Assembly: GCA_002269645.1 (NCBI GenBank)
Contig: NIVC01000586.1
Coordinates: forward strand, 210,490 to 274,489
Reading direction: 5' to 3'
DNA: 64,000 nt
DNA from: Macrostomum lignano
Lineage: Eukaryota
Each line of letters starts with the position of its first letter. Position 1 is the stretch's first letter. Below, one piece after another: positions 2,857-19,789 of this stretch. The notes beneath the pieces were generated by a model. It was given only the letters and a program-made list of their open reading frames with translations. It made no database searches and was not told the origin of the DNA. Position numbers and translations under genes: made by a program.

Positions 2857-4368
2857 ATTTATATAAAAATTTGTGTCAATGCTAGAGTAAGTTAGAGCTA
2901 GGAGATTTCAAACTCACTGCTAGCATAGCTTGTACATTCATATAGTAGTGTATTTTGTCTAGTATACTTGGCGCACAATTGAAAATATTTTTCAGTAACT
3001 TCTAGTGTATACATTATATGATCTTGACTATAGATGCACAAGTATATGTGCATATGTGTATTCCCTCTAGGAAAAATTTTATGAGGCAATGCTAAGTTAG
3101 TAGTTAGCAATTACTAACTTTGCAGCAGCAGCTAACCAACAAGTAGGAAGTTTTGGTTTCATGTCTAAGCTGCTAAATAATAACTATTAGTTAATAGTAA
3201 GGTTGTGCCACCAAAACATCTATGTGATAAGAATGTAGGCTCTCTCAAGGCAAGTAGGAAAATACTAAATATTAAGCAGCTTTTTGTGGCTTTGAATTAA
3301 AATGGCCTCCATTAAACACAAGAAACTTTTCTGTCCCTAATGGGAGCTCACAAGTCAATGTTTGCAAGTTTTTCTGATGTTTCTAAGGCAAAGAGTAAGA
3401 AAAGAAAGGTGTGAGAGAAGATTAGATTTGCTATGGAGTCGAATGGACTGAGCAATTCAGTGTTTGCTCATGGGAAATCAGGTTTCTACTTCTTAGGGCA
3501 TTGTATTCCAACTGTAGGCCAATACAATCTACTAGAAAATTAAATGTTTCTGGGTTCATTTAGAAGTATTGATTAAAGTCATTACTAGCATTATAATTTA
3601 TGTGATCTTTGAACTCTCTTGGCCAACAATTTTCAACCAGGATATCAGCTTATTGAAGCTTGTCAAATAGTGGAATCTCCATTCTTAGCTGCCTCTTGAG
3701 GATACTAAACTTTACCAGTTAAACTTGTTGTCCTTTTAGGCTTTAGCTGAACTGCTAAGGTCATGAAACTGCAAACTAGTGCAAACTTTTGACCATAGAC
3801 ATTGCTCAGAAACCCCTTATCCAACTAATATGCTTATGAAGCCAAAAGTTAGTGTAGTAGACTGATAAAAATTAGAATGCAACTACTAGACTCAAGAAAC
3901 CAAAGGATGCCTGCAAACTATATATAATTAAAATGTTTTGAGGCAAACTGATCCCTAATTTCTTCCTAGACAATGGCTATAAAATCTGATGGTTACACTA
4001 TTATAATGCTAGAACTATTTTGTTTCCCTGAAAAATATAATTTAACAAAGAATTAATAATGGTTATACTTTAAATTTGTTTTGGAATTTCCAAAAAGTAC
4101 TATATTACTCGTAATATTTTACCAATTACAAAAGAACAATTAACTTTTTATTGCTCCAAGCATGCATAAAGGATAATATATAAATACTCATTTCTTTGTT
4201 TAAAAAATATTTGAGCTCCAAAAATAAGAAAAGCACTACTACTACTTCCAGCACTACTGCTCTCATTTCATTCGGTCTCGCTTGGCAAGAGCAGCTGTCT
4301 AACCAGTCTGTGAAGCAGAAAAAAACAAAAGTCCAGCTAGCATATTTTCAATTGTACTTTATTACACA

Positions 4369-7300
4369 ATGGCCTGCGACCTGCTAATGCCATCATCGCA
4401 AGGCGGAGCCAACAATCCAGCCTTCTCGCCGCTGACCCTGTTCGAGTGCACCATCACCAACGCACAGATGCTCATCGACTCCATGGCCGACCGGGACCTG
4501 ATGCAGGCCCTGAAGATCGCCGGCGGCCTCCACACCCACATTGTCGGCGTCATCGAGCCGCGCTACGATCGCGTCTGTCAGCGTAGCGACGAGCACGAAG
4601 CCTGCTGCCAGGCGGCTGCCGCGGCTGCAACATCAGCAACGCTGACTCCTTCCAAGTCAGCTGGCGCCGCCAACTCGGCCAGTTTCGGAGCCAATGGCAG
4701 CGGCGCCGATTTGAAATCTGCCGTAGCTGCCGCCGCCGCCGCGGCCGGCCTGAAGTCCGAGTCTACCGGCTCTGTGGCAGCTGGCGGCGTCAAGTCCGAG
4801 CTGCTGGACCCTGACGCGTTCCCCGAGGAAGACGAAGAGGACTGTCTGATCCTGGAGGAGGACTGCTCCTTCCCCGCCGCTGCTGCCGCAATGTCGCCGT
4901 CGGCCTCCAGCTCCGCCAGCCGAAAGCGCCACCGCCCGTTGTCGCCCTCGTCAAGTCTGCAGATGCCGGGCGGAGCCAGCGCGGGTTTTCCTGGCAGCGC
5001 CCAGCAACTGGCCGAGTGCAAAAATGCGCTCAGGATGGCCTATAAAAATATTAAAGGCAACGGGCCGCACCTGTTTGACTTTGCGCTGTCGTGAGTTGCT
5101 CTGCAATTCTTGCATCCCTTGTAGAGGGATTCGGTGGGGTATGCGCGGGTGAGGGATTCAGTGGGGTATGAGCGGGTGAGGGATTCAGTGGGGTATGAGC
5201 GGGTGAGGGATTCAGTGGGGTATGAGCGGGTGAGGGATTCAGTGGGGTATGAGCGGGTGAGGGATTCAGTGGGGTATGAGCGTGTGAGGGATTCAGTGGG
5301 GTATGAGCGTGTGAGGGATTCAGTGGGGTATGAGCGGGTGAGGGATTCAGTGGGGTATGAGCGTGTGAGGGATTCGGTGGGGTATGAGCGTGTGAGGGAT
5401 TCAGTGGGGTATGAGCAGCACAGTGAGGGATTCAGTGGGGTATGAGCGGGTGAGGGATTCAGTGGGGTATGAGCGGGTGAGGGATTCAGTGGGGTATGAG
5501 CGTGTGAGGGATTCAGTGGGGTATGAGCGTGTGAGGGATTCAGTGGGGTATGAGCGTGTGAGGGATTCAGTGGGGTATGAGCGTGTGAGGGATTCAGTGG
5601 GGTATGAGCGTGTGAGGGATTCAGTGGGGTATGAGCGTGTGAGGGATTCAGTGGGGTATGAGCGGGTGAGGGATTCAGTGGGGTATGAGCGTGTGAGGGA
5701 TTCAGTGGGGTATGAGCGTGTGAGGGATTCAGTGGGGTATGAGCGTGTGAGGGATTCAGTGGGGTATGAGCGGGTGAGGGATTCAGTGGGGTTGGGTATG
5801 AGCGGGTGAAGGATTCAGTGGCGTATAAGCGTGTGAGGGATTCAGTGGGGTATGAGCGTGTGAGGGATTCAGTGGGGTATGAGCGTGTGAGGGATTCAGT
5901 GGGGTATGAGTGTGTGAGGGATTCAGTGGGGTATGAGCGTGTGAGGGATTCAGTGGGGTATGAGCGTGTGAGGGATTCAGTGGGGTATGAGCGGGTGAAG
6001 GATTCAGTGGCGTATAAGCGGGTGAGGGATTCAGTGGGGTATGAGCGGGTGAGGGATTCGGTGGGGTATGAGCGGGTGAGGAATTCGGTGGGGTATGAGC
6101 GGCACAGTGAGGGATCCATTGGGGTCTGAGCAGCACAATGAGGGATTCAGTGGGATATGAGCAGCACAGTGAAGGATTCAGTGGGATATGAGCAGCACAG
6201 TGAGGGATTCAGTGGGGTATGAGCAGCACAATGAGGGATTCAGTGGGGTATGAGCAACACAGTGAGGGATTCAGGGGTCTGAGCAGCACAGTGAGGGATT
6301 CAGTGGGGTATGAGCAGCACAGTGAGGAATTCAGTGGGGTATGAGCAGCACAGTGAGGGATTCAGTGGGGTATGAGCAGCACAGTGAGGGATTCAGTGGG
6401 GTATAAGCAGCACAGTGAGGGATTCAGTGGGGTATGAGCAGCACAGTGAGGGATTCAGTGGGGTATGAGCAGCACAGTGAGGGATTCAGTGGGGTGGTGA
6501 GGCAGTGCAAGAACCCAACCAATCGCATTACATTTCATTACAATTTCACCAACCAATCGCAACGCCGCCGCAGCTTCCACGACCCGTCCAATCAGAGAGT
6601 ATCCGAGCAGATTATCGCTACGGCCCGCCAGCAGCTGAGCCACCTGCGCCTGCCTAACGATGTCTGGTGGAGTGAGTTGGTTATTTAATAATTTAAACAA
6701 ATGCATAAGTGACTACTCGCAACCAGTTAAAGTAATAGCATTAGCAAATGTATTAAGTGAATATTGATGTCGGCCCTCTCCTTGCATTTGGTGACTTCGC
6801 ACCGTGATCCAGTTTGATTGCCAGCTACAATAAGAGTTTTCATATCTTACCTGAGTATGGCTAGTAGCTAGTTTGTTTCCCATGGGACGGCAGCGCAACT
6901 GTCCCGTCATTAATTGATTCCGCCTCTATGAATTCATAATTAACTAATTATCTATGCTCTTCTTAACTGTTAGCAGTACAGTATGCATTTCAGTTTGTTG
7001 ATTTTGCTTCCCACTACCTGAGGTGCAGGTTTTATTGGTTATTTAAACCGACTGCAGGGTCGCGTGCTGATTATTGATACAAGCTGTGCAATTAGTTGTA
7101 CTTTTATTGCTGATCAGCTGCGTGCTGCCGTTCAACTGAAACTTTGTTTAGGCCAAGCCGGCAACCTGTGTAAGCGAATCAAAATCGAGCTGAACAATAA
7201 CAAGCGGCGCAATCGGCAGTTTCGCTGCAGGCAGAAGGTTGTTCTCCAACTGATTATTCTATTGGCTACCTAGCTAGCGAATCCCTACCAGCTGCAATGC

Positions 7301-10300
7301 TGAGCAGCCAGCCTCCCACATCCCCTAATGAGCCAGCCTCCCACATCCTTAATGAGCCAGTCTACCTCACCCCCTAATGAGCAGCCATCCTCCCACATCC
7401 CTAATGAACCAGTCTCCCTCACCCCCTAATAAGCAGCCAGCCTACCATATCCCCTAATGAGCCAGCCTCCCACATCCCTTAATGAGCAGCCAGCCTCCAA
7501 CACCCCATAATGAGCAGCCAGCCTCCCACACTCCCTAATGATCCAGCCTCCCACATCCCTTAATGAGCAGCCAGCCTCCCACACTCCATAATGAGCCAGC
7601 CTCCCACACCCCCTAATGAGCAGCCAGCCTCCCACACCCCCTAATGAGCAGCCAGCCTCCCACACCCCCTAATGAGCAGTCAGCCTCCCACACCCCCTAA
7701 TGAGCAGCTAGCCTCCCACACTCCATAATGAGCCAGCCTCCCACACCCCCTAATGAGCAGCCAGCCTCCCACATCCCTAATGAGCAGCCATTGAGTCTTG
7801 TCTTCTTAGCTTAGTTTATTGTGGCAGTGATAACAATCGGGAAAAGTTCTCAATGCCCTTATGAAGTGAAGCGGATCAAACTGCGGTGAAGCGGTGAAGT
7901 CTCGGGCAGTTGCTTGCTCAGCTCCGACAGTCATACCGCAGAGCCAATCAAATGCGTTTTTTAGAATCGCTCAACAGCAGCGGCGTGTTCGGTCAGGCGA
8001 GGCACAATTACTTAGCCAAATTTCGAATGCTTAAAATTAAACGGAAAAGCAACGTAGGTTTATTTGAGACTGTGTTCTCACTGAGCTGCGTGTGTCTGCA
8101 AACTCTGTTAGGTCATGGTTATAACTAGGGGGACAGGCAAATAAACTGACTTGCTGTGCCAGCGCTGTTAACCTGTAACCAAGTGTTAACCCGTAAACAG
8201 AGAAAGGCATGCCACTCGCCTTGCAGACAATAAAGCTGCTCGAGCATTTTATGCCGAGGAGAAAAATCGCGTGCTCACTCGAGTCCGAATGCGCCGCGTT
8301 GCCGGGCAGAAGTCTGTAAGGAGTCGCATCTGCCTTCCCTTCCCATCTTGTTTTTCTGAGTTGCAGTTTTGTCGCTTCTAATAGTTGCTTAATCAGCTGT
8401 TGCCACGGGCGTCTGGAGTTCCCGCTGGACTGGACTGGGGCGAGCATGGGGGGGGTAGTCAAATTGGGTATATATTCAAAAGGTGTTCATGACGACGCTC
8501 AAAGATCCCAGTGTCCAGTCCAGATAAGCTCCAGTGGTCCCTGGCCCATTCACCCATTGTTCATCCTGTTAATCGTTGTTATACGCTTTTATAAAAATTC
8601 GTAGCGATTCGGTGGCAAAGAGTTGGCCCATATCGACTAGAGTGCAGCTAGGCAGTATCTATGCAATAATAGCACACTGGATTGGACCGCTTACTGACCT
8701 TATTGCAGAGCACTGCTTCCCCAGCGTGTACGATGAGTTAACCAAATATGACAAGCATAGGGAGCGAATGAAGCACAGAATGCGAGCTCGCAGGCTTATG
8801 AACAGCGTACGTATTATAAATAGCTATAACTATTTGGCAGTGCAAGCCTGCTTGTTTCATAAATCACTGCCTAATCACGCATCAAACGCAAGGTCCGCGG
8901 CTAACACTTCCCATGGTTTCTTAGCGCAATCTTAATCCTCTTTGGGGTTGGGGATTTCTTTTTAAACTGTTTCAGGCCTGTCCAGTGCTGCGTTTGCTGA
9001 TCTGCAGCACAGCATATTGGAGAAGCGGCACTATACTAAGCATTCTGTGCGGAAATTCCGCAGCAAACTCAAGGTAAACACTGCCCTGGTCCGGATTGGG
9101 TCTTTGATATTAGCTTTTGCTTCTGCAGTCCAGTGTGTTCACCGTGTGTTCCGTGTTTGTTCTGGGCTATTAAAAGAGCAAGCTTTAATAGCCAAGATCT
9201 GGTCTGACAGTCGAATCCCACTGTCAAGTCCCAATCCCATAGTCAGAAGTCCCAATCCCGCAGTCAGAAGTCCCAATCCCATAGTCAGAAGTCCCAATCC
9301 CACAGTCAAAAGTCCCAATCTCACAGTGGGAAGTCACAATCTCACAGTCAGAAGTCACAATCTCACAGTCGTAAGTCACAATCCCACAGTCAAAAGTGAC
9401 AATCCCACTGTCAGAAGTCTCAATCTCGCAGTCAGAAATCCCAATCCCGCACTCAGAAGTCCCAATCCCACAGTCAAAAGTCCCAATCTCACAGTGGGAA
9501 GTCACAATCTCACAGTCAGAAGTCACAATCCCACAGTCGTAAGTCACAATCCCACAGTCAAAAGTAACAATCCCACTGTCAGAAGTCTCAATCTCGCAGT
9601 CAGAAATCCCAATCCCGCACTCAGAAGTCCCAATCCCACAGTCAGAAGTCACAATCTCACAGTCGTAAGTCACAATCCCACAGTCAGAAGTCCCAATCTC
9701 ACAGTGGGAAGTCCCAATCCCACAGTCAGAAGTCCCAATCTCACAGTCAGAAGTCCTAATCCCGCAGTTAGAAGTCCCAATCCCACATTCAAATCCCAAG
9801 CCCATAGTCAGAAGTCACAATCACACAGTCAGAAGTCACAATCACACAGTAGGAAATCACAATCCCGCAGTCAGAAGTCCCAATCACACAGTCGGAAATC
9901 ACAATCCCGCAGTCAAAAGTCCTAGCCCTGCTAATTTCAAATTAATCTCTACTGACTAATCCCTATTAAATTTATTCTGATAAATTGATAGGTTGCATGC
10001 CTGTTGGAGGTGCATAGCAACCCGGTAACGATGGTAACAAATTTCACGCAGCATCAAAAGCAAGGCCCGGCCGCCCCAGTTTAGCCAGCTCCGTTAGAGA
10101 TTGAATCCAGTGTTTCAGGACCGCCCGGCAGTAACACCTGCGCCGTGCGCTGCATTGCAGGCTGCGCTGAGGAATTGTGGCTGCTATTGAAGAAAGCTGT
10201 GGCGCACAAGCGCGAAAGAGACGTCTTCTATCAGCGCAAGGGGCGCCTGAAAAATAAAGTAAAACCATGCAGTCTATGCTCATTTGCTTACTTTTTCCAC

Positions 10301-11114
10301 CGGGTTTTATCCTTTGTTGTGAATTAACCAATTGGGTCGGTAAGACGCATATAGGCTTTTAGGAAGTAAGTGCTAATCAGGGACTTTTCTGCTCTCATTT
10401 ATACGACTGACATGATGCCTCATCTTTAAAATTGATTGGGCTGCGTGATATTACACCTCGCTGCCTCCCGATTTCCATCTCCCATTTCCAACCTCCATCT
10501 CCCCCTCCCAGCCTCCCTCTCTACCCCCTCCCAGCCTCTCTCTCTACCCCCTCCCAACCTCCCTCTATCTCCCGCTCCCAACCTCCATCTCTACCCCCCT
10601 CCGAACCTCCCTCTCCATCTCCTCTTTTCAATCTACCTTCATCTCCCCCTCCCGACCTCCCTCTCCATCTCCCTCTCCCGACCTACCTCTCCGTGTCCCA
10701 CACGCCACATACAGCTCCTGTTTTCTGACCCATCAGAAACTGGCCAGACGGCAGAAGAGCTTCGAACTGCTAGCAACCAGTTTATCCACCGACAAGTTCG
10801 ACAAGTACCGCATCATTTTGTCCCGGGACTACACTTCGTCTGACGAGGAAGCCGATGTTGGCAGCGGCGGTGCCAGCGCGAGCGGCGATGACGGAGGAGG
10901 CGGCGGAGGCGTCCTTCGAGTCCGCGAGCTGCCCTGGGAATCTGCGGAGCTGCGCGAGATGAAGCAGCAGCTGGACTCGATCTATCTGGAGAATTGCGCA
11001 ACTCAGAAGCAGGCGCAGCAGTTGCGCAGCACAGTGCGCGACTCCGGCTGCGTCAGCGGCAGGACTCCACCTGCCAACTGCCCGTCCTGGGCGCTGTCTA
11101 ATGAGTACCGCTAA
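4369..11114 (+). CDS. Paralog 1 of an uncharacterised gene with a mutually exclusive exon cluster; 427-431 aa per isoform
   Basis: Exon 1 is 4369-5090 (donor GTGAGT, phase 2). Exon 2 is 6574-6671 (98 nt, CAG acceptor, GTGAGT donor, phase 1). One of six cassettes follows (7152-10258). The last exon is 10737-11114 (phase 0, KLARRQKSFELLATSL...SRDYTSSDEE...WESAELREMKQQLD...PSWAL). Flanking splice positions match paralog 2 and the joined frame is open. Confidence 0.85.
5120..6497. repeat. 27-bp minisatellite (GAGCGGGTGAGGGATTCAGTGGGGTAT) in intron 1 of paralog 1
   Basis: About 50 near-identical tandem units; explains the YERVRDSVG-type ORFs. Confidence 0.95.
6884..6906 (+). promoter_or_regulatory. 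Candidate splicing docking site for the paralog 1 cassette cluster
   Basis: GGGACGGCAGCGCAACTGTCCCG lies 212 nt after the exon-2 donor, a similar distance to the paralog 2 dock. It is complementary to 7122-7133 (12 bp) and 7903-7913 (11 bp with a bulge); other matches are short. Confidence 0.4.
7152..7237 (+). CDS. Paralog 1 cassette exon 1 (86 nt): (S)QAGNLCKRIKIELNNNKRRNRQFRCRQK
   Basis: TTTAG acceptor, weak GTTGTT donor, phase 1 to 0, open frame, basic. Confidence 0.6.
7305..7790. repeat. Minisatellite, about 25-30 bp (TAATGAGCAGCCAGCCTCCCACACCCCC)
   Basis: Tandem degenerate units between cassettes 1 and 2. Confidence 0.9.
7965..8053 (+). CDS. Paralog 1 cassette exon 2 (89 nt): (K)SLNSSGVFGQARHNYLAKFRMLKIKRKSN
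   Basis: TTTTTAG acceptor, GTAGGT donor, phase 1 to 0. Confidence 0.75.
8227..8315 (+). CDS. Paralog 1 cassette exon 3 (89 nt): (N)NKAARAFYAEEKNRVLTRVRMRRVAGQKS
   Basis: TTGCAG acceptor, GTAAGG donor, phase 1 to 0. Confidence 0.75.
8709..8806 (+). CDS. Paralog 1 cassette exon 4 (98 nt): (K)HCFPSVYDELTKYDKHRERMKHRMRARRLMNS
   Basis: TTGCAG acceptor, GTACGT donor, phase 1 to 0. Confidence 0.75.
8976..9073 (+). CDS. Paralog 1 cassette exon 5 (98 nt): (S)LSSAAFADLQHSILEKRHYTKHSVRKFRSKLK
   Basis: TTTCAG acceptor, GTAAAC donor, phase 1 to 0. Confidence 0.75.
9215..9925. repeat. 21-bp minisatellite (AGTCCCAATCCCACAGTCAGA)
   Basis: About 33 tandem units between cassettes 5 and 6; explains the SPNPTVR ORF. 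Confidence 0.92.
10161..10258 (+). CDS. Paralog 1 cassette exon 6 (98 nt): (S)CAEELWLLLKKAVAHKRERDVFYQRKGRLKNK
   Basis: TTGCAG acceptor, GTAAAA donor, phase 1 to 0. Confidence 0.75.
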
Positions 11115-12846: not shown

Positions 12847-15800
12847 ATGACGGACATTCTGCCTAGCCACTCCATCACCGGGGGCGTTTTTTCACCCCTG
12901 ACCCTGTTCGAGTCCACCATCACCAACGCGCAGATGCTGGTGGAGTCCATGGCCGAGCGGGAGCTGTTCTCCGCCCTGCGCATCATCGGCGGCCTGCACA
13001 GCCACGTTGTCCAGGTCATGGAGCCGCGCTACGGCCGCCTGTGTGAGCGCAGCGACCACCTCGCCGAGCTGGAGGCTGCCGGCCTGGATCAAAGCCACGG
13101 CTCCGCTGCCGAGGCTGCCGAAGCCACTTCATCCTCGTCGGCTGCTGCCGCTTCTAGCAGACGCTTCGCTAAGGAGGAGAAACTGCTAGGCGACACCGAC
13201 ACGGAGCAGCAGTGCACCTCCGTGCTGCGCTCCGCCCTTGGCACCATCAAGGTATTTCCTATTCACCGCGTTGTGATGTCGGCGCCTTTCCTATTATATT
13301 TGATGTCGCGGACTTTCCCATCTCCTCTGATGTCGCCGACTTTCCCATCTCCTCTGATGTCGCCGACTTTCCCATCTCTGATGTCGCCGCCTTTCCCATC
13401 TTTTTTTATGTCGCCGCCTTTCCCCACTCCTTTGATGTCGCCGCCTTTCCCCACTCCTTTGATGTCGCCGCCTTTCCCGTCTCTTTGATGTCGCCGTCAT
13501 TCTCTTCTCTTCTCTTCTGGTGCTCAACAGATGGAGAACTTTGACGCGGCCGGCGCTTCCGCCCTGCCATCCGCCGCTAACGCAAACTTCGGCGAACAGC
13601 TGGAGCCGCCGGAGATCTTGGAAGAGGACGCCGATGATGAAGACGAGGATGACGATTGCGTCATCACCGACTACTTCGACGACAGCAGCTTTGGCGCTAG
13701 CGGCATCGGCGCCTTCGGTGGCGTCGGCCCGTCGCCCGCCAAAATGCCGCGACTCGGCGGGGTCGGCGGCGGCGCAGGCGACAGCTCGATGCCGGCCGAG
13801 TGCAAGACCATCATGCGCCGGGCTTACAAAGCTCTCAAGGGCAACGGGCCGCATCTGTTTGACTTCAGCCTGCCGTGAGTCTCCTTAGCTGGCACGCCGG
13901 TTACCAGTCCCGGCCTCAGTCTGGAAACGCCTCTAGAAATCTTCGACTTTACATCAGCCAAAATGCAAACCCTGGTTAGGCTACCCTGAACAAACCCTGA
14001 GCCACCCCTGAACAAACCCTGAGCCACCCCTGAACTCAAGTCTGAGCCATTCCCTGAACTCAACCCTGAGCCACCCCTTGAACTCAACCCTGAGCCACCC
14101 CCTGAACTTAACCCTGAGCCACCCCCTGAGCTCAATCCTGAGCCACCCCCTGAACTCAACTCTGAGCCACCCCCTGAACTCAACTCTGAGCCACCCCCTG
14201 AACTCAACTCTGAGCCACCCCCTGAACTCAAATCTGAGCCACCCCCTGAACTCAACTCTGAGCCACCCCCTGATCTCAACCCTGAGCCAGCCCCTGAACT
14301 CAACCCTGAGCCACCCTTGAACTCAACCCTGAGCCAGCCCTGATCTCTGTGGACTCAAGAGCGCCGCCTCCCCCACCGCCGGCCCCACAGCTTCTCTTCG
14401 GAGCACAACCAGCGAGTTGCCACCCGCGTCACCGCCAAAGCCAAGGAGATGGCCCAGGGCAAGGGCTGGCCCGAGGACATTTGGCTGAGTGAGAAACAGT
14501 GCCGCTTTTTGTGCATTTAGATATAAAGTTTGATAAGTTGATAAATGATGTGTAGAATACAACTCTTAATTAAGATTACACTGCGTATGAAGTAGTTAAT
14601 AGAATAGATTAATCGTAAAATCTTATCTTAGTTATATTCTATTAATACTACTCGCACAGACTAGCCAAGTAGTATCTATAGGCTGCGCTAATTTGCTAAT
14701 TTTACCTGCCCTCAAGTCTGGAAACGTCGCAAGTAATTTGGGTACAAGAAATATTTAATAACTAATTTTAATCTCCTTTCAACTTGGGCTGCTTCTAATA
14801 GGTTCATGTCTGACTATTTGAGACACAATCAGAGACTTAATTATGCATTAATTATCTAATTAATTATTTGCATTATTTCTATTGCCGAACTGCCTACAGT
14901 TAGCAGGTGGTAAAGCGATGTAATGCTACTGAGACTGTTGCCTATTCGACGTTTCTTATTGGCCATTTAGAATGAGTTTTGAATAAAGCTGAACTGCTCA
15001 ACTCACACTTAGAACTGCCCTACGGCTCAAGGCTAGTCTACCTGTACCTGGATTTTCGGCAAAAGATGAGGTTTAAGCATCGATGCGTTGTAAGCTTTGC
15101 TGGTCATCTCTGTTTCTATCGGTTTTTTGTGTCACACCAGCCTCCACTGTCCTGCTTGCGATGTTCGCCCAGACTCGCGTCTTTATAACAGGCTTTGCTC
15201 AAAACAGTTTTGCCAATATGTTTCTGGCCTCCAATTTGCCCAGGGCTGCCCAAAGAGTCCAGAGTAAATCGGATTCACTGCACCTATGGAGCCCGTCTGC
15301 GCGCCAAGCACAGGCAGATTGTGAGTTCCCTCCCCCTGTGCCCTCCCCTGTACCTTGATGAGCCGCCTCTCCCCCTGTGCCTTTGATGAGCCGCCTCTCC
15401 CCTTGTGCCTTTGATAAGCCGCCTCCCTCCCCCTGTGCCTTTGATAAGCCGCCTCCCTCCCCCTGAGCCTTTGATGAGCCGCCTCTCCCCATGTGCCTTT
15501 GATCAGCCGCCTCTGCCCCTGTGCCTTTGATGAGCGGCCTCCCTTCCCCTGAGCCTTTGATAAGCCGCCTCTCCCCTGAGCCTTTGATGAGCCGCCTCTC
15601 CCCTTGTGCCTTTGATAAGCCGCCTCCCTCCCCTGAGCCTTTGATAAGCCGCCTCTCCCCTTGTGCCTTTGATAAGCCGCCTCCCTCCCCCTGAGCCTTT
15701 GATGAGCCGCCTCTCCCCCATGTGCCTTTGATCAGCCGCCTCTGCCCCTGTGCCTTTGATGAGCGGCCTCCCTTCCCCTGAGCCTTTGATAAGCCGCCTC

Positions 15801-18800
15801 TCCCCTGAGCCTTTGATGAGCCGCCTCTCCCCTTGTGCCTTTGATAAGCCGCCTCCCTCCCCCTGTGCCTTTGATAAGCCGCCTCCCTCCCCCTGAGCCT
15901 TTGATGAGCCGCCTCTCCCCACGTGCCTTTGATCAGCCGCCTCTGCCCCTGTGCCTTTGATGAGCGGCCTCCCTTCCCCTGAGCCTTTGATAAGCCGCCT
16001 CTCCCCTGAGCCTTTGATGAACCGCCTCTCCCCTTGTGCCTTTGATAAGCCGCCTCCCTCCCCTGTGCCTTTGATAAGCCGCCTCCCTCCCCCTGAGCCT
16101 TTGATGAGCCGCCTCTCCCCCATGTGCCTTTGATCAGCCGCCTCTGCCCCTGTGCCTTTGATGAGCGGCCTCCCTTCCCCTGAGCCTTTGATAAGCCGCC
16201 TCTCCCCTGAGCCTTTGATGAGCCGCCTCTCCCCTTGTGCCTTTGATAAGCCGCCTCCCTCCCCCTGTGCCTTTGATAAGCCGCCTCTCCCCTTGTGCCT
16301 TTGATAAGCCGCCTCCCTCCCCCTGAGCCTTTGATAAGCCGCCTCTCCCCTTGTGCCTTTGATGAGCCGCCTCTCCCCTTGTGCCTTTGATAAGCCGCCT
16401 CCCTCCCCTGAGCCTTTGATAAGCCGCCTCTCCCCTTGTGCCTTTGATCAGCCGCCTCTCCCCCTGTGCCTTTGATAAGCCGCCTCCCTCCCCCCTGAGC
16501 CTTTGATGTCCGCCTGTCTTTGCGCTGGGTTAAGCAAGTCAGTGATAAATAAGTCTACAATTTTACAATCAATTCGACGTTTCCCGTCTGGACAGTTGGC
16601 TAAAAACTCTCGCCTATAAGTGCACCCAGAGTCTGAGGCGATTTTCCCGCAGGACTGCCGAAAGTCGGCCGCCTGTCCGAGATTTTCTTTGTTTTCAGAA
16701 GTCAAATCCGAAACAAGCTGCGACTCGTTGTACGCAATTGTCACAGTTCCGCACTTTCTCTGTTGTGTTGGGAATTTTTCTGTCAAAAATTTTCTACGAT
16801 GCATATCGGCGTTTCCTGACTAAAGTTGAGCAGATTTGGCTTTGCGTAGCAAATTTCTACCAAAGTCGCTATCGTCTACTCACGCCAGTCAGTAGTGTAT
16901 TGAGGAGTGCTCGGCTCACTTTTTACATCTATTTTTAGATCTGCCTTCCAGCGGCAAAATCAGGAAGATGTTCACCGATTTTAGGCAGAAGATGCGCGCT
17001 AGGCTGGTGCTTGGCGTGCGTGCCCGATTTTCTCTGTTTAGGTTTTTATTTAATTTTTTGACGTTTCCCGGCTGCCTGTAAGCTCACTGCTGTGTGAGGC
17101 TTGTGCTTGCTAACACTTGACCTGACTGCCCCGCTGTTGCAGGGCTGCCACACACCGGCCGGCCGACCGCCATATTCAACGATTTTAGAAAGAAAATGCG
17201 CACCAGGTTTCGAATGGATGTTAGTGATAATTGCTTTAGGTGTTTCTATGGGGCTCTGCGAATTCCGCTTCAGTGCTGAGACGTTTCCCGACAATGGCCG
17301 GGTGCTGCAATTGTGCGAACCCCCCTGTGTCCGTCACGCCACCGACTGCCGCTTGCAGATCTGCCGCCCAAGGCCCGCCTGCTCGCCATTTTTGGCGACT
17401 TTAAAAAGAAAAGGCGATTCAAGTCCCGCTCTGATGTCAGTGCAGCTGGGTGGCTTTTCGCCTCATCTGTGTTGTCTGTTTTCCCCCATTTTTGCTTGCA
17501 CTGCCTTGGCTGGGTAGGCAGGGTAGCTAGATTGGTAGACAGACAAATTGATTGATTGACAGACAGGCAGGCAGGCAAACAAACACTAAGATAGGCAAAC
17601 AGACAGACACAGATACGCTAGCAGACCAACGCAATTGCGCGGTGCACCGTGGGGGGGGGGTGAGGCTGTACATTGCTGGCACTGTTGGGCCAGCCGCCCT
17701 TACTCGCTGTAACTTATCGCTCAGCCTGTTACAATGCCAGACGCAATGCCAGACGTTTCCTGACAACTCAGACTGTGAATTGTACAGCACACAGAATTGC
17801 CAGCAAACAGTTCCCCATCGCGCGCGTTGCAGAGCTGCCCATGAACAGCCGATTGATCTGCATATTCGCCGACTTTAGAAAGAAGATGCGCAACAGATTT
17901 CGTTCAGATGTTGGTCCGGGTTCAAAACTCGATTTCAGAGCTTTCAGGCTGCGATATGAAAATATTTGTTACATGCTATTGGAACTACTGTACTGACTGC
18001 TGATCAGTAGTCAATGCCATCATGATGTGAAAAATGTTTTCCTCTCTGATTTGCTTCTGTTTAAACTGTACTGAGCTGTCGAAAAGCCACTGCATGACCT
18101 GAGCTATGACTGAAAAGCCACTGCATGACCTGATCTATGACTGAAAAGCCACTGCATGACCTGATCTATGACTGAAAAGCCACTGCATGACCTGATCTAT
18201 GACTGAAAAGCCACTGCATGAGATCTGAGCTATGACTGAAAAGCCACTGCATGAGATCTGAGCTATGACTGAAAAGCCACCACTCTATGACCTGAGCTAT
18301 GACTGAAAAGCCACCACTCTATGACCTGAGCTATGACTGAAAAGCCACCACTCTATGACATGAGCTGTGACTGAAAAGCCACCACTCTATGACCTGAGCT
18401 ATGACTGAAAAGCCACTGTATGAAGGCTATGACTGAAATGAATCTCAAAGCAGCCAGCTCTCGCAGTCTTGCCTCGCTTCCCCCGAACTTGCAGAAGCTG
18501 AACCGCCGTCAGAAAAGTTTCGAACTCGTGGCCACCAGCCTGACCTCTGACGAGCTGGAGAAGTTCCGCGTGATCCTCACCAGGGAGTACACCAGCTCGG
18601 ATGAGGAGTGCGGCTCCGGCGGCGCCGACCAGCTGCGGGTCCGCGAGCTGTCCTGGGAGTCCGACGAGGTGAAGCGGCTGAAGCGGCAGCTGGACCAGGT
18701 GTACGCGGACAACTGCGCCACCACCAAGCAGAAGCAGCAGCTGGCCAGGTGCATCCGCGACCCCGTCCGATCGCGGTCGCAGCGGCCGCCGCCCGAGGCT

Positions 18801-18884
18801 GCGCCAAGCTGGGCTTTGAAGGCGCCGCTGCAGAAGAACCGGCCGGGAGACGGCGCTCCGCCGCCCGCCTCCGGCACCGCCTGA
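12847..18884 (+). CDS. Paralog 2 of an uncharacterised gene with a mutually exclusive exon cluster; 437 aa per isoform
   Basis: Exons are 12847-13251, 13531-13874 (donor GTGAGT, phase 2), 14391-14488 (98 nt, phase 1), one of seven 77-nt cassettes, and 18495-18884 (KLNRRQKSFELVATSL...TREYTSSDEE...WESDEVKRLKRQLD...PSWAL). The total is 1314 nt with an open frame. The N-terminus FSPLTLFESTITNAQML is shared with paralog 1. Confidence 0.88.
13985..14340. repeat. 24-bp minisatellite (CCCTGAACTCAACTCTGAGCCACC)
   Basis: About 14 tandem units in an intron of paralog 2. Confidence 0.92.
14715..14733 (+). promoter_or_regulatory. Putative docking site (AGTCTGGAAACGTCGCAAG) for the paralog 2 cassette cluster
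   Basis: Reverse-complementary to a motif found upstream of all seven cassettes. It lies about 227 nt after the donor of the 98-nt exon. Confidence 0.8.
14947..14955 (+). promoter_or_regulatory. Selector A (CGACGTTTC)
   Basis: 9/9 complementary to dock positions 14721-14729; about 58 nt before cassette A. Confidence 0.65.
15013..15089 (+). CDS. Paralog 2 cassette A (77 nt): (K)LPYGSRLVYLYLDFRQKMRFKHRCV
   Basis: CTTAG acceptor, GTAAGC donor, phase 1 to 0, homologous to B-G. Confidence 0.88.
15155..15175 (+). promoter_or_regulatory. Selector B (CTTGCGATGTTCGCCCAGACT)
   Basis: Pairs with the whole dock: 11 bp (one G-U) plus 7 bp around a 1x3 internal loop; about 69 nt before cassette B. Confidence 0.7.
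15244..15320 (+). CDS. Paralog 2 cassette B (77 nt): (R)LPKESRVNRIHCTYGARLRAKHRQI
   Basis: CCCAG acceptor, GTGAGT donor, phase 1 to 0. Confidence 0.85.
15330..16505. repeat. About 23-26-bp minisatellite (GTGCCTTTGATAAGCCGCCTCCCTCCCCCT)
   Basis: About 45 units with higher-order blocks, lying between cassettes B and C. Confidence 0.95.
16575..16588 (+). promoter_or_regulatory. Selector C (CGACGTTTCCCGTC)
   Basis: 10 contiguous bp with the dock; about 65 nt before cassette C. Confidence 0.7.
16653..16729 (+). CDS. Paralog 2 cassette C (77 nt): (R)LPKVGRLSEIFFVFRSQIRNKLRLV
   Basis: CGCAG acceptor, GTACGC donor, phase 1 to 0. Confidence 0.85.
16807..16821 (+). promoter_or_regulatory. Selector D (CGGCGTTTCCTGACT)
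   Basis: 14/15 positions pair with the dock (one G-U); about 118 nt before cassette D. Confidence 0.7.
16939..17015 (+). CDS. Paralog 2 cassette D (77 nt): (N)LPSSGKIRKMFTDFRQKMRARLVLG
   Basis: TTTTAG acceptor, GTGCGT donor, phase 1 to 0. Confidence 0.88.
17060..17073 (+). promoter_or_regulatory. Selector E (GACGTTTCCCGGCT)
   Basis: 13/14 positions pair with the dock (one G-U); about 70 nt before cassette E. Confidence 0.7.
17143..17219 (+). CDS. Paralog 2 cassette E (77 nt): (R)LPHTGRPTAIFNDFRKKMRTRFRMD
   Basis: TTGCAG acceptor, GTTAGT donor, phase 1 to 0. Confidence 0.88.
17280..17292 (+). promoter_or_regulatory. Selector F (GACGTTTCCCGAC)
   Basis: 12/13 positions pair with the dock; about 67 nt before cassette F. 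Confidence 0.72.
17359..17435 (+). CDS. Paralog 2 cassette F (77 nt): (N)LPPKARLLAIFGDFKKKRRFKSRSD
   Basis: TTGCAG acceptor, GTCAGT donor, phase 1 to 0. Confidence 0.88.
17752..17764 (+). promoter_or_regulatory. Selector G (GACGTTTCCTGAC)
   Basis: 12/13 positions pair with the dock; about 69 nt before cassette G. Confidence 0.72.
17833..17909 (+). CDS. Paralog 2 cassette G (77 nt): (K)LPMNSRLICIFADFRKKMRNRFRSD
   Basis: TTGCAG acceptor, GTTGGT donor, phase 1 to 0. Confidence 0.88.
18085..18435. repeat. 28-31-bp minisatellite (GACCTGAGCTATGACTGAAAAGCCACTGCAT)
   Basis: About 12 units in the intron before the last exon of paralog 2. Confidence 0.92.
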
Positions 18885-19789
18885 CCGCCTTCGCGAGTTA
18901 CTCCTGCTTGACCTGACTTCATCTGCCCTTCTCCGTTATCCGCTCCCATACGCCCTTACCCTCCGTTATTCGCCCGTCCATTCGCCCTTACCCTCCGTTA
19001 TCCGCCCCCTCATCCGCCCTTACCCTCCGTTATTCGCCCCTCCAGCCGCCCTTATTTTCCGTTATCCGCCACCTCATCCGCCCTTTCTCTACGTTATCCG
19101 CCCCCACCCGCCCTTACCCTCCGTTATCCGCCCCCTCATCCGCCCTTACCCTCCGTTATTCGCCCCCTCATCCGCCCTTACCCTCCGTTATTCGCCCCTC
19201 CAGCCGCCCTTTCTCTTTATCCGCCCCCTTTCTTGCCCTTGCTCTCACAGTCCCTGTTATCCGCCCCGCCTCCGCTCAGTCGCAGTTCGCAAGCGCGGAC
19301 CAGTATTCGAACCCGGGGCAACGAGTTATTGAACTGTTATTAAAAGCCGCTCTGTGCCCTCCTGTTTGCGCGTCTGCAATCCCCTGTGCCGCTGTTCAAT
19401 GTACATTGACTTGTGTTTTATTGAATATTTTCTGTTCGTGGCAGACTTTGCATTTTTATTTTTGTAAACTATTTGAGTATCAATATATTTGCTTTGTCAA
19501 TCACCCATCAATTAGCATGGACTGTTTTATTTTTCATTAATATACACCCGCGTTTAATCACAATGTCCAGGCTCTGTTGAACTGCAATTGAATGTCTTTA
19601 ACCAGGCAAATACAGAACCGCCAACGCATTAACAACTGCTTATTCAATTATCAATTGCTGTTGCGAAATGATCGAATTCTTATCGATAAATATCTTGATA
19701 AGCTGGCTGCTTTATTTTGAAAATAGATTTTTGCAATTGCATTATCAAAAATATCAGTTTAGTTTGTGGACCCTGAAATAATTGGGAAT

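What the first reader, a model, noticed from the sequence alone, without database searches (positions are those of the whole stretch)
15013..17909. Hidden cluster of seven homologous 77-nt mutually exclusive exons in an uncharacterised gene
Seen: seven AG...GT-bounded segments, each exactly 77 nt, each phase 1 to phase 0. Each encodes a 25-aa variant of LPxxxRxxxIFxDFRxKMRx+xRxx and lies between a phase-1 donor (14488) and a phase-0 acceptor (18495). Including 0, 2 or 3 cassettes frameshifts the last exon, while exactly one gives a 437-aa protein. Established: this is the architecture of mutually exclusive clusters such as Drosophila Dscam1. Inference: a 7-way isoform switch in a non-Dscam gene family; I know of no description of it but cannot search.
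Basis: partly seen in the sequence, partly recalled or inferred. Interest (0 to 1): 0.95.

Follow-up and report, generated by a model that had tools for sequence, protein, structure and literature searches.

The report
Flatworm seven-exon mutually exclusive splicing cluster
An unannotated part of a Macrostomum lignano (flatworm) gene holds seven interchangeable 77-base exons, and I also found a conserved intronic "docking" sequence with a matching "selector" before each exon, the RNA-pairing layout known from insect Dscam1 exon 6, here in an unrelated gene family and a different phylum.

Summary
Seven homologous 77-nt AG..GT exons lie between a phase-1 donor (14488) and a phase-0 acceptor (18495). 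Any one of them gives a 437-aa protein.

The window is M. lignano contig NIVC01000586.1, gene BOX15_Mlig032950g2. Its GenBank model stops in the intron after exon 3, so the cluster and the last exon are unannotated.

New findings:
- **Docking site.** A 17-nt sequence (CTGGAAACGTCGCAAGT, 14718-14734) sits downstream of exon 3. It supplies the only 10-mers shared by the cluster introns of three diverged paralogous loci.
- **Selectors.** Complementary sequences lie 50-108 nt upstream of the cassettes. Six of seven are far stronger than controls; the first is weak.
- **Paralogues.** They carry 1, 5, 7 and about 13 cassettes in colinear orthologous order, under purifying selection. One-cassette paralogues have no docking site.
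- **Transcripts.** RNA-seq-derived models of paralogues contain exactly one cassette. Two different cassettes are annotated for one gene and its near-identical copy.

No RNA evidence exists for this locus itself. Protein function is unknown: it belongs to a metazoan-wide uncharacterised family with no Pfam domain.

Verdict: a real, undescribed Dscam-exon-6-type mutually exclusive cluster, and a new member of a known kind.

The parts
12847..13251 (+). Coding exon 1 (ATG at 12847), constitutive
   Evidence: Spliced model gives 437 aa. Identical to the RNA-seq-derived protein PAA80364.1/P0001.
13531..13874 (+). Coding exon 2, constitutive, phase 0 to 2
   Evidence: The junction is confirmed by P0001.
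14391..14488 (+). Coding exon 3, constitutive. It ends in phase 1 (..TGG CTG A|gtgaga).
   Evidence: The same phase-1 'A|GTGAG' donor occurs in paralogues L001, L002 and L003.
14711..14735 (+). Docking site. The core CTGGAAACGTCGCAAGT is at 14718-14734, 229 nt downstream of the exon 3 donor.
   Evidence: The 17-mer is identical in paralogous loci L001 and L002 inside otherwise unalignable introns. Its overlapping 10-mers are the only 10-mers shared by all three cluster introns. It occurs once per locus in L004, L005 and L006. It is invariant in the two near-identical copies.
14946..14963 (+). Selector 1 (weak), 50 nt upstream of cassette 1
   Evidence: Duplex with the docking site is -16.0 kcal/mol, which is within background (18% of control blocks). 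It does contain CGACGTTTCT.
15013..15089 (+). Cassette 1 (K)LPYGSRLVYLYLDFRQKMRFKHRCV
   Evidence: Orthologous to L001 cassette 14913 and L002 cassette 16142.
15152..15176 (+). Selector 2, 68 nt upstream of cassette 2. This is the strongest pairing.
   Evidence: -29.6 kcal/mol, the minimum of the whole 64-kb window. The 12-mer GCTTGCGATGTT is shared with the orthologous selector of L001.
15244..15320 (+). Cassette 2 (R)LPKESRVNRIHCTYGARLRAKHRQI
   Evidence: Orthologous to L001 cassette 15159, the one in UniProt model P0004, and to L002 cassette 16410.
16574..16594 (+). Selector 3, 59 nt upstream of cassette 3
   Evidence: -19.2 kcal/mol; 3.8% of control blocks reach this value.
16653..16729 (+). 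Cassette 3 (R)LPKVGRLSEIFFVFRSQIRNKLRLV
   Evidence: 17 of 25 aa identical to L001 cassette 17902, with pN/pS 0.26.
16806..16831 (+). Selector 4, 108 nt upstream of cassette 4
   Evidence: -23.2 kcal/mol; no control block reaches this value.
16939..17015 (+). Cassette 4 (N)LPSSGKIRKMFTDFRQKMRARLVLG
17060..17074 (+). Selector 5, 69 nt upstream of cassette 5
   Evidence: -20.5 kcal/mol; 1.1% of control blocks reach this value.
17143..17219 (+). Cassette 5 (R)LPHTGRPTAIFNDFRKKMRTRFRMD
17273..17293 (+). Selector 6, 66 nt upstream of cassette 6
   Evidence: -22.4 kcal/mol; no control block reaches this value. The only selector difference among the three near-identical copies (17289) is at an unpaired base.
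17359..17435 (+). Cassette 6 (N)LPPKARLLAIFGDFKKKRRFKSRSD
17746..17765 (+). Selector 7, 68 nt upstream of cassette 7
   Evidence: -21.3 kcal/mol; 0.5% of control blocks reach this value.
17833..17909 (+). Cassette 7 (K)LPMNSRLICIFADFRKKMRNRFRSD
18495..18884 (+). Last coding exon (phase 0, stop included). It encodes the family's conserved C-terminal domain (KLNRRQKSFE...RVRELSWES...PPPEAAPSWA).
   Evidence: Conserved across the family and in other metazoans. Not part of any GenBank gene model at this locus.

Best explanation
The seven 77-nt segments are real, alternative coding exons of one M. lignano gene (BOX15_Mlig032950g2, a member of an uncharacterised metazoan protein family). One of them is spliced into each mRNA.

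Proposed mechanism, by analogy with Dscam1 exon 6:
- One docking sequence in the intron just after constitutive exon 3 can base-pair with only one selector at a time. Each cassette has its own selector 50-108 nt upstream.
- The pairing loops out the cassettes that lie between the docking site and that selector. It brings the chosen cassette's acceptor next to the exon 3 donor.
- Because 77 is not a multiple of 3, mRNAs with zero, two or three cassettes are frameshifted and would be removed by nonsense-mediated decay.
- The variable segment is a 25-residue, strongly basic stretch predicted to be helical. Isoforms therefore differ in one surface of an otherwise constant protein.

Shown here: the exon anatomy, the frame rule, selection on every cassette, conservation of the docking site, complementarity and position of the selectors, and one-cassette transcripts in paralogues.

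Inferred: use of all seven cassettes at this locus, dependence of choice on the RNA pairing, how downstream cassettes are skipped, NMD of aberrant products, and the function of the protein.
For: **Anatomy and frame rule.**

**Docking site.**
- The 17-mer is identical in three paralogous loci whose closest cassette pairs are near or beyond saturation at synonymous sites (pS 0.47-0.94).
- With cassettes masked, its overlapping 10-mers are the only ones shared by all three cluster introns of 4-7.5 kb.

**Selectors.**
- In the window, the six best duplexes with the docking site across the 3.7-kb cluster all lie 59-108 nt upstream of a cassette.
- Only 3.8% of 639 control 90-nt blocks reach -19.2 kcal/mol, but 6 of 7 cassette-upstream regions do.
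- In L001 the top 7 duplexes, and in L002 the top 4, lie 49-87 nt upstream of cassettes.
- Different selectors complement different, overlapping parts of the docking site.
- At central positions where a G.U wobble is possible, 20 of 29 substitutions keep the pair through a wobble.

**Negative controls.** Paralogues with a single cassette (L003, and gene A in the window) have no docking motif.

**Selection on cassettes.**
- pN/pS is 0.18-0.56 in all close pairs, and cassette orthology is colinear across loci.
- Among three 97-99.6% identical genomic copies, the cassettes show 4 substitutions. All are at codon position 3, three are synonymous, and there are no indels. The introns carry many substitutions and indels.

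**Transcripts.**
- The GenBank models are RNA-seq derived and keep only the dominant isoform (PMC5730564).
- PAA90078.1 contains exon 3 + cassette 9 + last exon. UniProt A0A1I8JJF2, for the same gene, contains cassette 7 alone. PAA65011.1 and PAA81625.1 contain cassette 3 alone.
Against: - No RNA data could be examined for this locus. Its annotated transcripts (P0001, P0170) end in the intron after exon 3.
- Selector 1 is no better than background.
- Cassettes 3-7 have weak donors: GTACGC, GTGCGT, GTTAGT, GTCAGT and GTTGGT.
- In L001 the last three cassettes, and in L002 the first, have no detectable selector. Pairing therefore cannot be the whole mechanism.
- One transcript model of a paralogue copy skips all cassettes (P0173).
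- One near-identical copy of this gene has a 1-nt deletion in exon 3. This may be an assembly error or decay of that copy.
- The selector motif is also inherited by duplication, so its sharing among selectors is not evidence of pairing by itself.
- The wobble count does not correct for shared ancestry or transition bias.
Confidence: 0.7

Rival explanations
1. The cluster is spliced in a mutually exclusive way, but the conserved GACGTTTCC-type elements and the 'docking' 17-mer are binding sites for a splicing protein rather than RNA-RNA pairing partners. Exclusivity would then come from repressors plus the frameshift/NMD rule.
For: - The selector core is shared through duplication.
- Some cassettes in L001 and L002 lack selectors.
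- Selector 1 is weak.
- No mutational data exist.
Against: - The docking element is the reverse complement of the selectors, not a copy of them.
- Individual selectors extend the complementarity in different directions along the docking site.
- Wobble-compatible substitutions are enriched.
- Selectors pair better with their own locus's docking flank in 16 of 20 cases, although base composition confounds this.
Confidence: 0.12
2. Only one or a few cassettes are used at this locus. The others are silent duplicated pseudo-exons that are never spliced.
For: - Cassettes 3-7 have weak donors.
- There is no transcript evidence for any cassette at this locus.
Against: - All seven keep exactly 77 nt, AG/GT boundaries and an open frame even though the window's cassettes differ at about 65% of synonymous sites on average.
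- pN/pS is below 0.6 in every close pair.
- Differences among the three near-identical copies fall only at third codon positions, with no indels.
- No decayed copies exist.
- Each cassette keeps its own selector.
Confidence: 0.1
3. This copy of the gene is not productively expressed. It would be a decaying duplicate in a recently polyploid genome, with transcripts that end in intron 3.
For: - The annotated transcripts of the window gene and its copy L004 read into intron 3 (P0001, P0170). The copy L005 carries a 1-nt deletion in exon 3.
Against: - Exons 1-3 are transcribed and correctly spliced.
- All three copies keep every cassette, the docking site and the last exon intact, with synonymous-type changes only.
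- Truncated models are expected when a short-read assembler that discards minor isoforms meets seven alternative paths (TACO isoform-frac 0.75).
Confidence: 0.08

Closest known systems
Drosophila Dscam1 exon 6 cluster (docking site / selector sequences; Graveley model, as summarised in PMC6071210)
   Same: - A tandem array of homologous, equal-length exons lies between two constitutive exons.
- One docking site sits in the intron just downstream of the upstream constitutive exon.
- One selector lies upstream of each variable exon, complementary to overlapping parts of the docking site.
- The docking site is the most conserved intronic element.
   Different: - The gene is unrelated: no Ig or FN3 domains and no Pfam hit at all.
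- The phylum is Platyhelminthes, not Arthropoda.
- There are 7 variants here (5 and about 13 in paralogues) against 48 in Dscam1 exon 6.
- The same docking 17-mer is shared by several paralogous genes of one genome.
- No experimental proof of pairing exists, and no repressor is known.
Insect MRP (8 variants), Mhc, 14-3-3zeta and srp mutually exclusive clusters with competing RNA structures (PMC6071210, PMC4691838)
   Same: - Mid-sized clusters of 3-8 homologous exons.
- One docking element competed for by several selectors.
   Different: - In those genes the docking site lies downstream of the cluster, or the pairing is bidirectional (PMC6071210).
- Here it lies upstream, and a search for shared intronic words found no second conserved element near the last exon.
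Two-exon mutually exclusive pairs controlled by competing RNA structures in vertebrates, e.g. ATE1 exons 7a/7b (PMC7797038)
   Same: - Competing intronic base pairings decide which homologous exon is included.
   Different: - Only two exons are involved, with several separate regulatory elements rather than one docking site for many selectors.
Duplication model for the origin of competing structures (Ivanov and Pervouchine 2018, PMC6071210)
   Same: - Each duplicated unit here contains a cassette and its upstream selector, as the model predicts when one arm of an intronic stem is copied together with the exon.
- Copy number varies (1, 5, 7, about 13) among paralogues.
   Different: - The model is about origin, not about present function. 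Here the one-cassette paralogues lack the docking motif, so the ancestral stem is not seen.

Membership tests
Mutually exclusive exon cluster (Hatje-Kollmar sequence criteria, PMC3923563) | Neighbouring exons of similar length, homologous sequence, same reading frame and conserved splice sites | tested here: met
   Seven exons of exactly 77 nt, all AG..GT, all phase 1 to 0, with profile E-values of 1e-12 to 1e-14.
Mutually exclusive exon cluster | Exactly one exon of the cluster is present in each mature mRNA | tested here: inconclusive
   No RNA data for this locus. RNA-seq-derived models of paralogues carry exactly one cassette, with two different cassettes annotated for one gene and its near-identical copy. 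One model skips all cassettes.
Mutually exclusive exon cluster | Wrong numbers of cassettes are non-productive (frame rule) | tested here: met
   Zero or two cassettes give frameshifts with early stops. Three cassettes also shift the frame by arithmetic.
Docking-site/selector (Dscam1 exon 6 type) splicing control | A single conserved docking site in the intron next to the upstream constitutive exon | tested here: met
   The 17-mer at 14718-14734 is identical in three paralogous loci and provides their only shared intronic 10-mers.
Docking-site/selector (Dscam1 exon 6 type) splicing control | A selector upstream of each variable exon, complementary to overlapping parts of the docking site | tested here: met
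   Six of seven are far stronger than controls, and selector 1 is weak. 9 of 13-14 cassettes in L001 and 4 of 5 in L002 have one. All overlap the central GACGTTTC.
Docking-site/selector (Dscam1 exon 6 type) splicing control | Exon choice depends on the pairing (disruptive and compensatory mutations) | not testable with these tools
   This needs minigenes or transgenes. Only indirect support exists: wobble-compatible substitutions and the own-locus flank preference.
Docking-site/selector (Dscam1 exon 6 type) splicing control | A repressor or other device keeps the cassettes downstream of the chosen one out | not testable with these tools
   No candidate element is conserved across paralogues apart from the docking site.
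Dscam gene family | Ig and fibronectin type III domain cell-surface protein | tested here: not met
   No Pfam domain reaches its cut-off. The predicted fold is helical and partly disordered, with no PDB match. It resembles Dscam in splicing layout only.

The most novel reading that the evidence does not exclude
A docking-site/selector system for multi-exon mutually exclusive splicing arose independently in a flatworm. It is shared, with the same 17-nt docking sequence, by several paralogous genes carrying 5 to about 13 variable exons. Together these would give a family-wide repertoire of isoforms that differ in one basic helix of a metazoan-wide protein of unknown function. That would show the mechanism is not an arthropod peculiarity. 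It would also provide a model open to transgenesis for testing how such systems originate and work.
Probability: 0.6. Interest if true: 0.8.

Novelty: new member of a known kind. Interest (0 to 1): 0.7.

Why it matters
- **Taxonomic reach.** In the literature I could search, multi-exon clusters governed by one docking site and many selectors are described only in arthropod genes (Dscam1, MRP, Mhc, 14-3-3zeta, srp). Vertebrates have two-exon cases. A clear example in a flatworm, in an unrelated gene family, would argue that this RNA-pairing solution evolves repeatedly when exons duplicate in tandem.
- **Natural comparison series.** The paralogues, with 1, 5, 7 and about 13 cassettes and the same docking sequence, form a natural series for studying how such clusters grow.
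- **Testability.** M. lignano can be made transgenic (PMC5730564), so docking and selector mutations can be tested directly.
- **Annotation.** The finding corrects the public record. The GenBank model of this gene is truncated after exon 3, and several UniProt models string two or three cassettes together.
- **Function.** It points to a variable, strongly basic helix as the functionally tuned part of a metazoan-wide protein family of unknown function.

Tried and rejected
- **Wide docking probe.** A first duplex scan with a 46-nt docking region was swamped by long, bulged GC-rich duplexes. I replaced it with the 25-nt core.
- **Isoform proteins in the large database.** A profile of 25 modelled isoform segments from three loci found no further spliced isoforms.
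- **Protein function.** No Pfam family reached its cut-off. The AlphaFold model is helical with a mean pLDDT of 57, and Foldseek against the PDB gave nothing (best E=3.5). A profile search found 572 relatives, including echinoderm, hemichordate, amphioxus and mollusc proteins, all uncharacterised.
- **Motif downstream of the cassettes.** A TTTCTCTGTTT / GTTTCTAT motif follows cassettes 1, 3, 4 and 5 and looked complementary to the exon 3 donor region. It is absent from the paralogues, and the complementary base at 14496 differs in the near-identical copies. I dropped it.
- **Second docking site near the last exon.** No intronic word is shared there.
- **Own-locus versus cross-locus docking energies.** Own-locus pairing is better in 16 of 20 selectors (p=0.004). 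Base composition of the flanks confounds this, so it counts only as weak support.
- **Literature.** Searches for the locus tags and for Macrostomum or flatworm mutually exclusive exons found nothing relevant.

Full report
**Source of the sequence.** The window is Macrostomum lignano DNA. It is identical over 21.7 kb to contig NIVC01000586.1 of assembly GCA_002269645.1 (window position = record position minus 210,489). All close protein matches are M. lignano proteins.

**Check of the observation.**
- I scanned 14400-18600 exhaustively for AG + 77 nt + GT segments that are open in phase 1. The scan returns the seven segments at exactly the coordinates given, each encoding an LPxxxRxxxIFxDFRxKMRxRxR-type 25-mer, plus five unrelated chance segments.
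- A profile HMM scores the seven at E=1e-12 to 1e-14 among 2905 candidate segments from four loci.
- A three-frame scan of the whole interval between exon 3 and the last exon finds exactly seven copies and no decayed remnants.
- The model is exon 1 12847-13251, exon 2 13531-13874, exon 3 14391-14488, one cassette, last exon 18495-18884. It gives 437 aa with any cassette.
- Skipping all cassettes, or including two, produces frameshifts with early stops. Three cassettes also break the frame by arithmetic.
- Exons 1-3 and their junctions agree with GenBank protein PAA80364.1 (BOX15_Mlig032950g2). That model reads on into the intron after exon 3 and stops.
- No GenBank gene model covers the cassettes or the last exon. 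The cluster really is hidden.

**A docking site and selectors.**
- Upstream of the cassettes there is a recurring GACGTTTCC motif. Its reverse complement occurs once, in the intron 229 nt downstream of the exon 3 donor.
- I ran RNAduplex scans with the 25-nt core (14711-14735) against the 3.7-kb cluster. The six best duplexes lie 59-108 nt upstream of cassettes 2, 4, 6, 7, 5 and 3, at -29.6 to -19.2 kcal/mol. Cassette 1 has a weaker one (-16.0) 50 nt upstream.
- Of 639 control 90-nt blocks elsewhere in the window, 3.8% reach -19.2 and none reaches -22.4. Six of the seven cassette-upstream regions reach -19.2.
- This arrangement matches the Dscam1 exon 6 cluster: docking site after the upstream constitutive exon, one selector before each variable exon. 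Other insect clusters place the docking site downstream (PMC6071210).

**Comparative evidence from paralogous loci.**
- I fetched three paralogous M. lignano loci. They contain 13-14 (L001), 5 (L002) and 1 (L003) homologous 77-nt cassettes in the same phase.
- A tandem paralogue in the window (gene A, 4303-11111) has a single, non-duplicated middle exon.
- The 17-mer CTGGAAACGTCGCAAGT is identical in the window, L001 and L002, while the surrounding intron is unalignable.
- With cassettes masked, the only 10-mers shared by the cluster introns of all three loci are the eight overlapping words of this 17-mer.
- In L001 the top seven duplexes, and in L002 the top four, lie 49-87 nt upstream of cassettes.
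- The one-cassette loci have no docking motif.
- Selectors share the centre GACGTTTC but extend the complementarity to different sides.
- At central positions where a G.U wobble is possible, 20 of 29 substitutions keep the pair by wobble. This count is not corrected for shared ancestry or transition bias.
- Selectors pair better with their own locus's docking flank in 16 of 20 cases. This is weak support because base composition confounds it.

**Are all cassettes functional?**
- Cassette orthology is colinear across loci. Window cassettes 1, 2 and 3 correspond to L001 cassettes 6, 7 and 11-13, and window cassettes 1 and 2 to L002 cassettes 4 and 5. L002 cassettes 1-3 correspond to L001 cassettes 1-2, 4 and 5. 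The array therefore predates the split of the paralogues.
- In all close pairs pN/pS is 0.18-0.56, with synonymous sites near or beyond saturation.
- Two further genomic copies of the window gene (L004 and L005, 97-99.6% identical) keep all seven cassettes and the docking site.
- Across these copies the 539 cassette bases carry four substitutions. All are at third codon positions (three synonymous, one M to I) and there are no indels. The 1824 intronic bases compared carry 47 variable columns, including indels. The single selector difference is at an unpaired base.

**Transcript evidence.**
- No RNA-seq tool was available.
- The GenBank models of this assembly are RNA-seq derived: StringTie and TACO, plus a mapped de novo transcriptome, plus TransDecoder. 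TACO was run with isoform-frac 0.75, which discards minor isoforms (PMC5730564).
- PAA90078.1 (locus L006) is the near-identical copy of the L001 gene. It consists of exons 1-3, cassette 9 alone, and the last exon.
- UniProt A0A1I8JJF2, for the L001 gene, has cassette 7 alone.
- PAA65011.1 and PAA81625.1 (the L002 gene and its copy) have cassette 3 alone.
- PAA59491.1 joins exon 3 directly to the last exon and is frameshifted. Complete skipping therefore occurs and is non-productive, as the frame rule predicts.
- Several UniProt models of the older assembly string two or three cassettes together using shifted frames or odd splice sites (P0002, P0003, P0016, P0171, P0176). I regard these as mispredictions.
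- A profile search with 25 modelled isoforms found no additional isoform proteins.

**The protein.**
- No Pfam domain reaches its cut-off.
- A profile of seven M. lignano paralogues finds 572 relatives at E<=0.001. They include uncharacterised proteins of a sea star, hemichordates, amphioxus and a mussel. In those proteins the cassette position aligns by eye with a conserved 'YFxSxRDxxRR' stretch.
- An AlphaFold model of paralogue P0005 places the cassette at the start of a long helix (311-344; block-mean pLDDT 54-93) that continues into the last exon.
- Foldseek against the PDB found nothing.
- The cassettes are strongly basic. The conserved positions are L1, P2, R6, I10, F11, F14, R15 and basic residues at 17, 19, 21 and 23. 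The other positions vary. I infer a variable binding surface on a constant scaffold. The function remains unknown.

**Mechanism proposed.**
- The docking site can pair with one selector at a time. Pairing loops out the cassettes between the docking site and that selector and brings the chosen acceptor close to the exon 3 donor.
- The frame rule, with NMD, removes mRNAs with zero, two or three cassettes.
- How cassettes downstream of the chosen one are skipped is unknown.
- Weak points: selector 1 is weak; cassettes 3-7 have weak donors; and L001's last three cassettes and L002's first lack selectors.

**Novelty.** Six full-text searches found no description of mutually exclusive clusters in Macrostomum, no mention of these locus tags, and no docking/selector system in a flatworm. 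The mechanism is of a known kind, while the gene family, the phylum and the sharing of one docking sequence among paralogous genes are new. I rate it a new member of a known kind, with interest 0.7. Confidence in the full explanation is 0.7, limited by the lack of RNA evidence at this locus.

Noticed in passing
window 4303-11111 (+): There is a tandem paralogue (gene A; P0014, BOX15_Mlig028241g1) of the same family directly upstream. It has the same phase-1 'A|GTGAGT' donor after its exon-3 equivalent (ending about 6672). It has only one middle exon (about 7152-7236) and no docking motif. Loci L002 and L006 also have a paralogue of the same family as the upstream neighbour of the cluster-bearing gene.
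   Followed up: partly
window 13274-13496, 13984-14347, 15343-16515, 18081-18438, 18919-19245: Minisatellites (periods 27, 24, about 28/201/430, 34 and 32 nt) fill introns 1 and 2, the intron between cassettes 2 and 3, the intron before the last exon, and the 3'UTR. The intron holding the 15343-16515 array is about 570 nt shorter in the near-identical copy L004. The loop between the docking site and selectors 3-7 therefore differs in length between copies.
   Followed up: partly
window 13915-13926: A 12-nt partial copy of the docking site (AGTCTGGAAACG) lies in intron 2, upstream of exon 3. It is not seen at the equivalent place in L001 or L002. It may be chance, a decoy or a relic.
   Followed up: no
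window 14846-14863; L002 12505-12522: An AT-rich 18-mer (CATTAATTATCTAATTAA) is identical in the window and in L002. In both it lies 110-225 nt downstream of the docking site. It is not in L001. Its significance is unknown.
   Followed up: no
window 14470 (exon 3); L005: The near-identical copy L005 (BOX15_Mlig032950g1) lacks one base in exon 3. Its annotated protein therefore ends ...GKGWPRTFG. This is either an assembly error or an inactivated copy.
   Followed up: partly
L001 16702, 17902, 18147; L002 13004: These cassettes are intact and conserved but have no detectable selector within 200 nt. The three L001 cassettes also have unusual GTAAT donors. They may use another control element.
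   Followed up: partly
window 15090-15120, 16730-16770, 17016-17045, 17220-17250: A motif TTTCTCTGTTT / GTTTCTAT recurs 15-30 nt downstream of cassettes 1, 3, 4 and 5. It is complementary to GAGAAACAG at the exon 3 donor (14491-14499). It is absent from the paralogues, and the complementary base 14496 differs in the near-identical copies. It is probably a relic of recent duplications.
   Followed up: partly
proteins P0002, P0003, P0006, P0007, P0171 (UniProt entries for M. lignano): The UniProt names given to models of this gene and its family (Exo70, Sec8, WASH_WAHD, protein kinase, Rab-GAP TBC) look unfounded. For the window gene's own product, which P0002, P0003 and P0171 model, no such Pfam domain was found. 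The names look like artefacts of merged or mis-assigned gene models.
   Followed up: no
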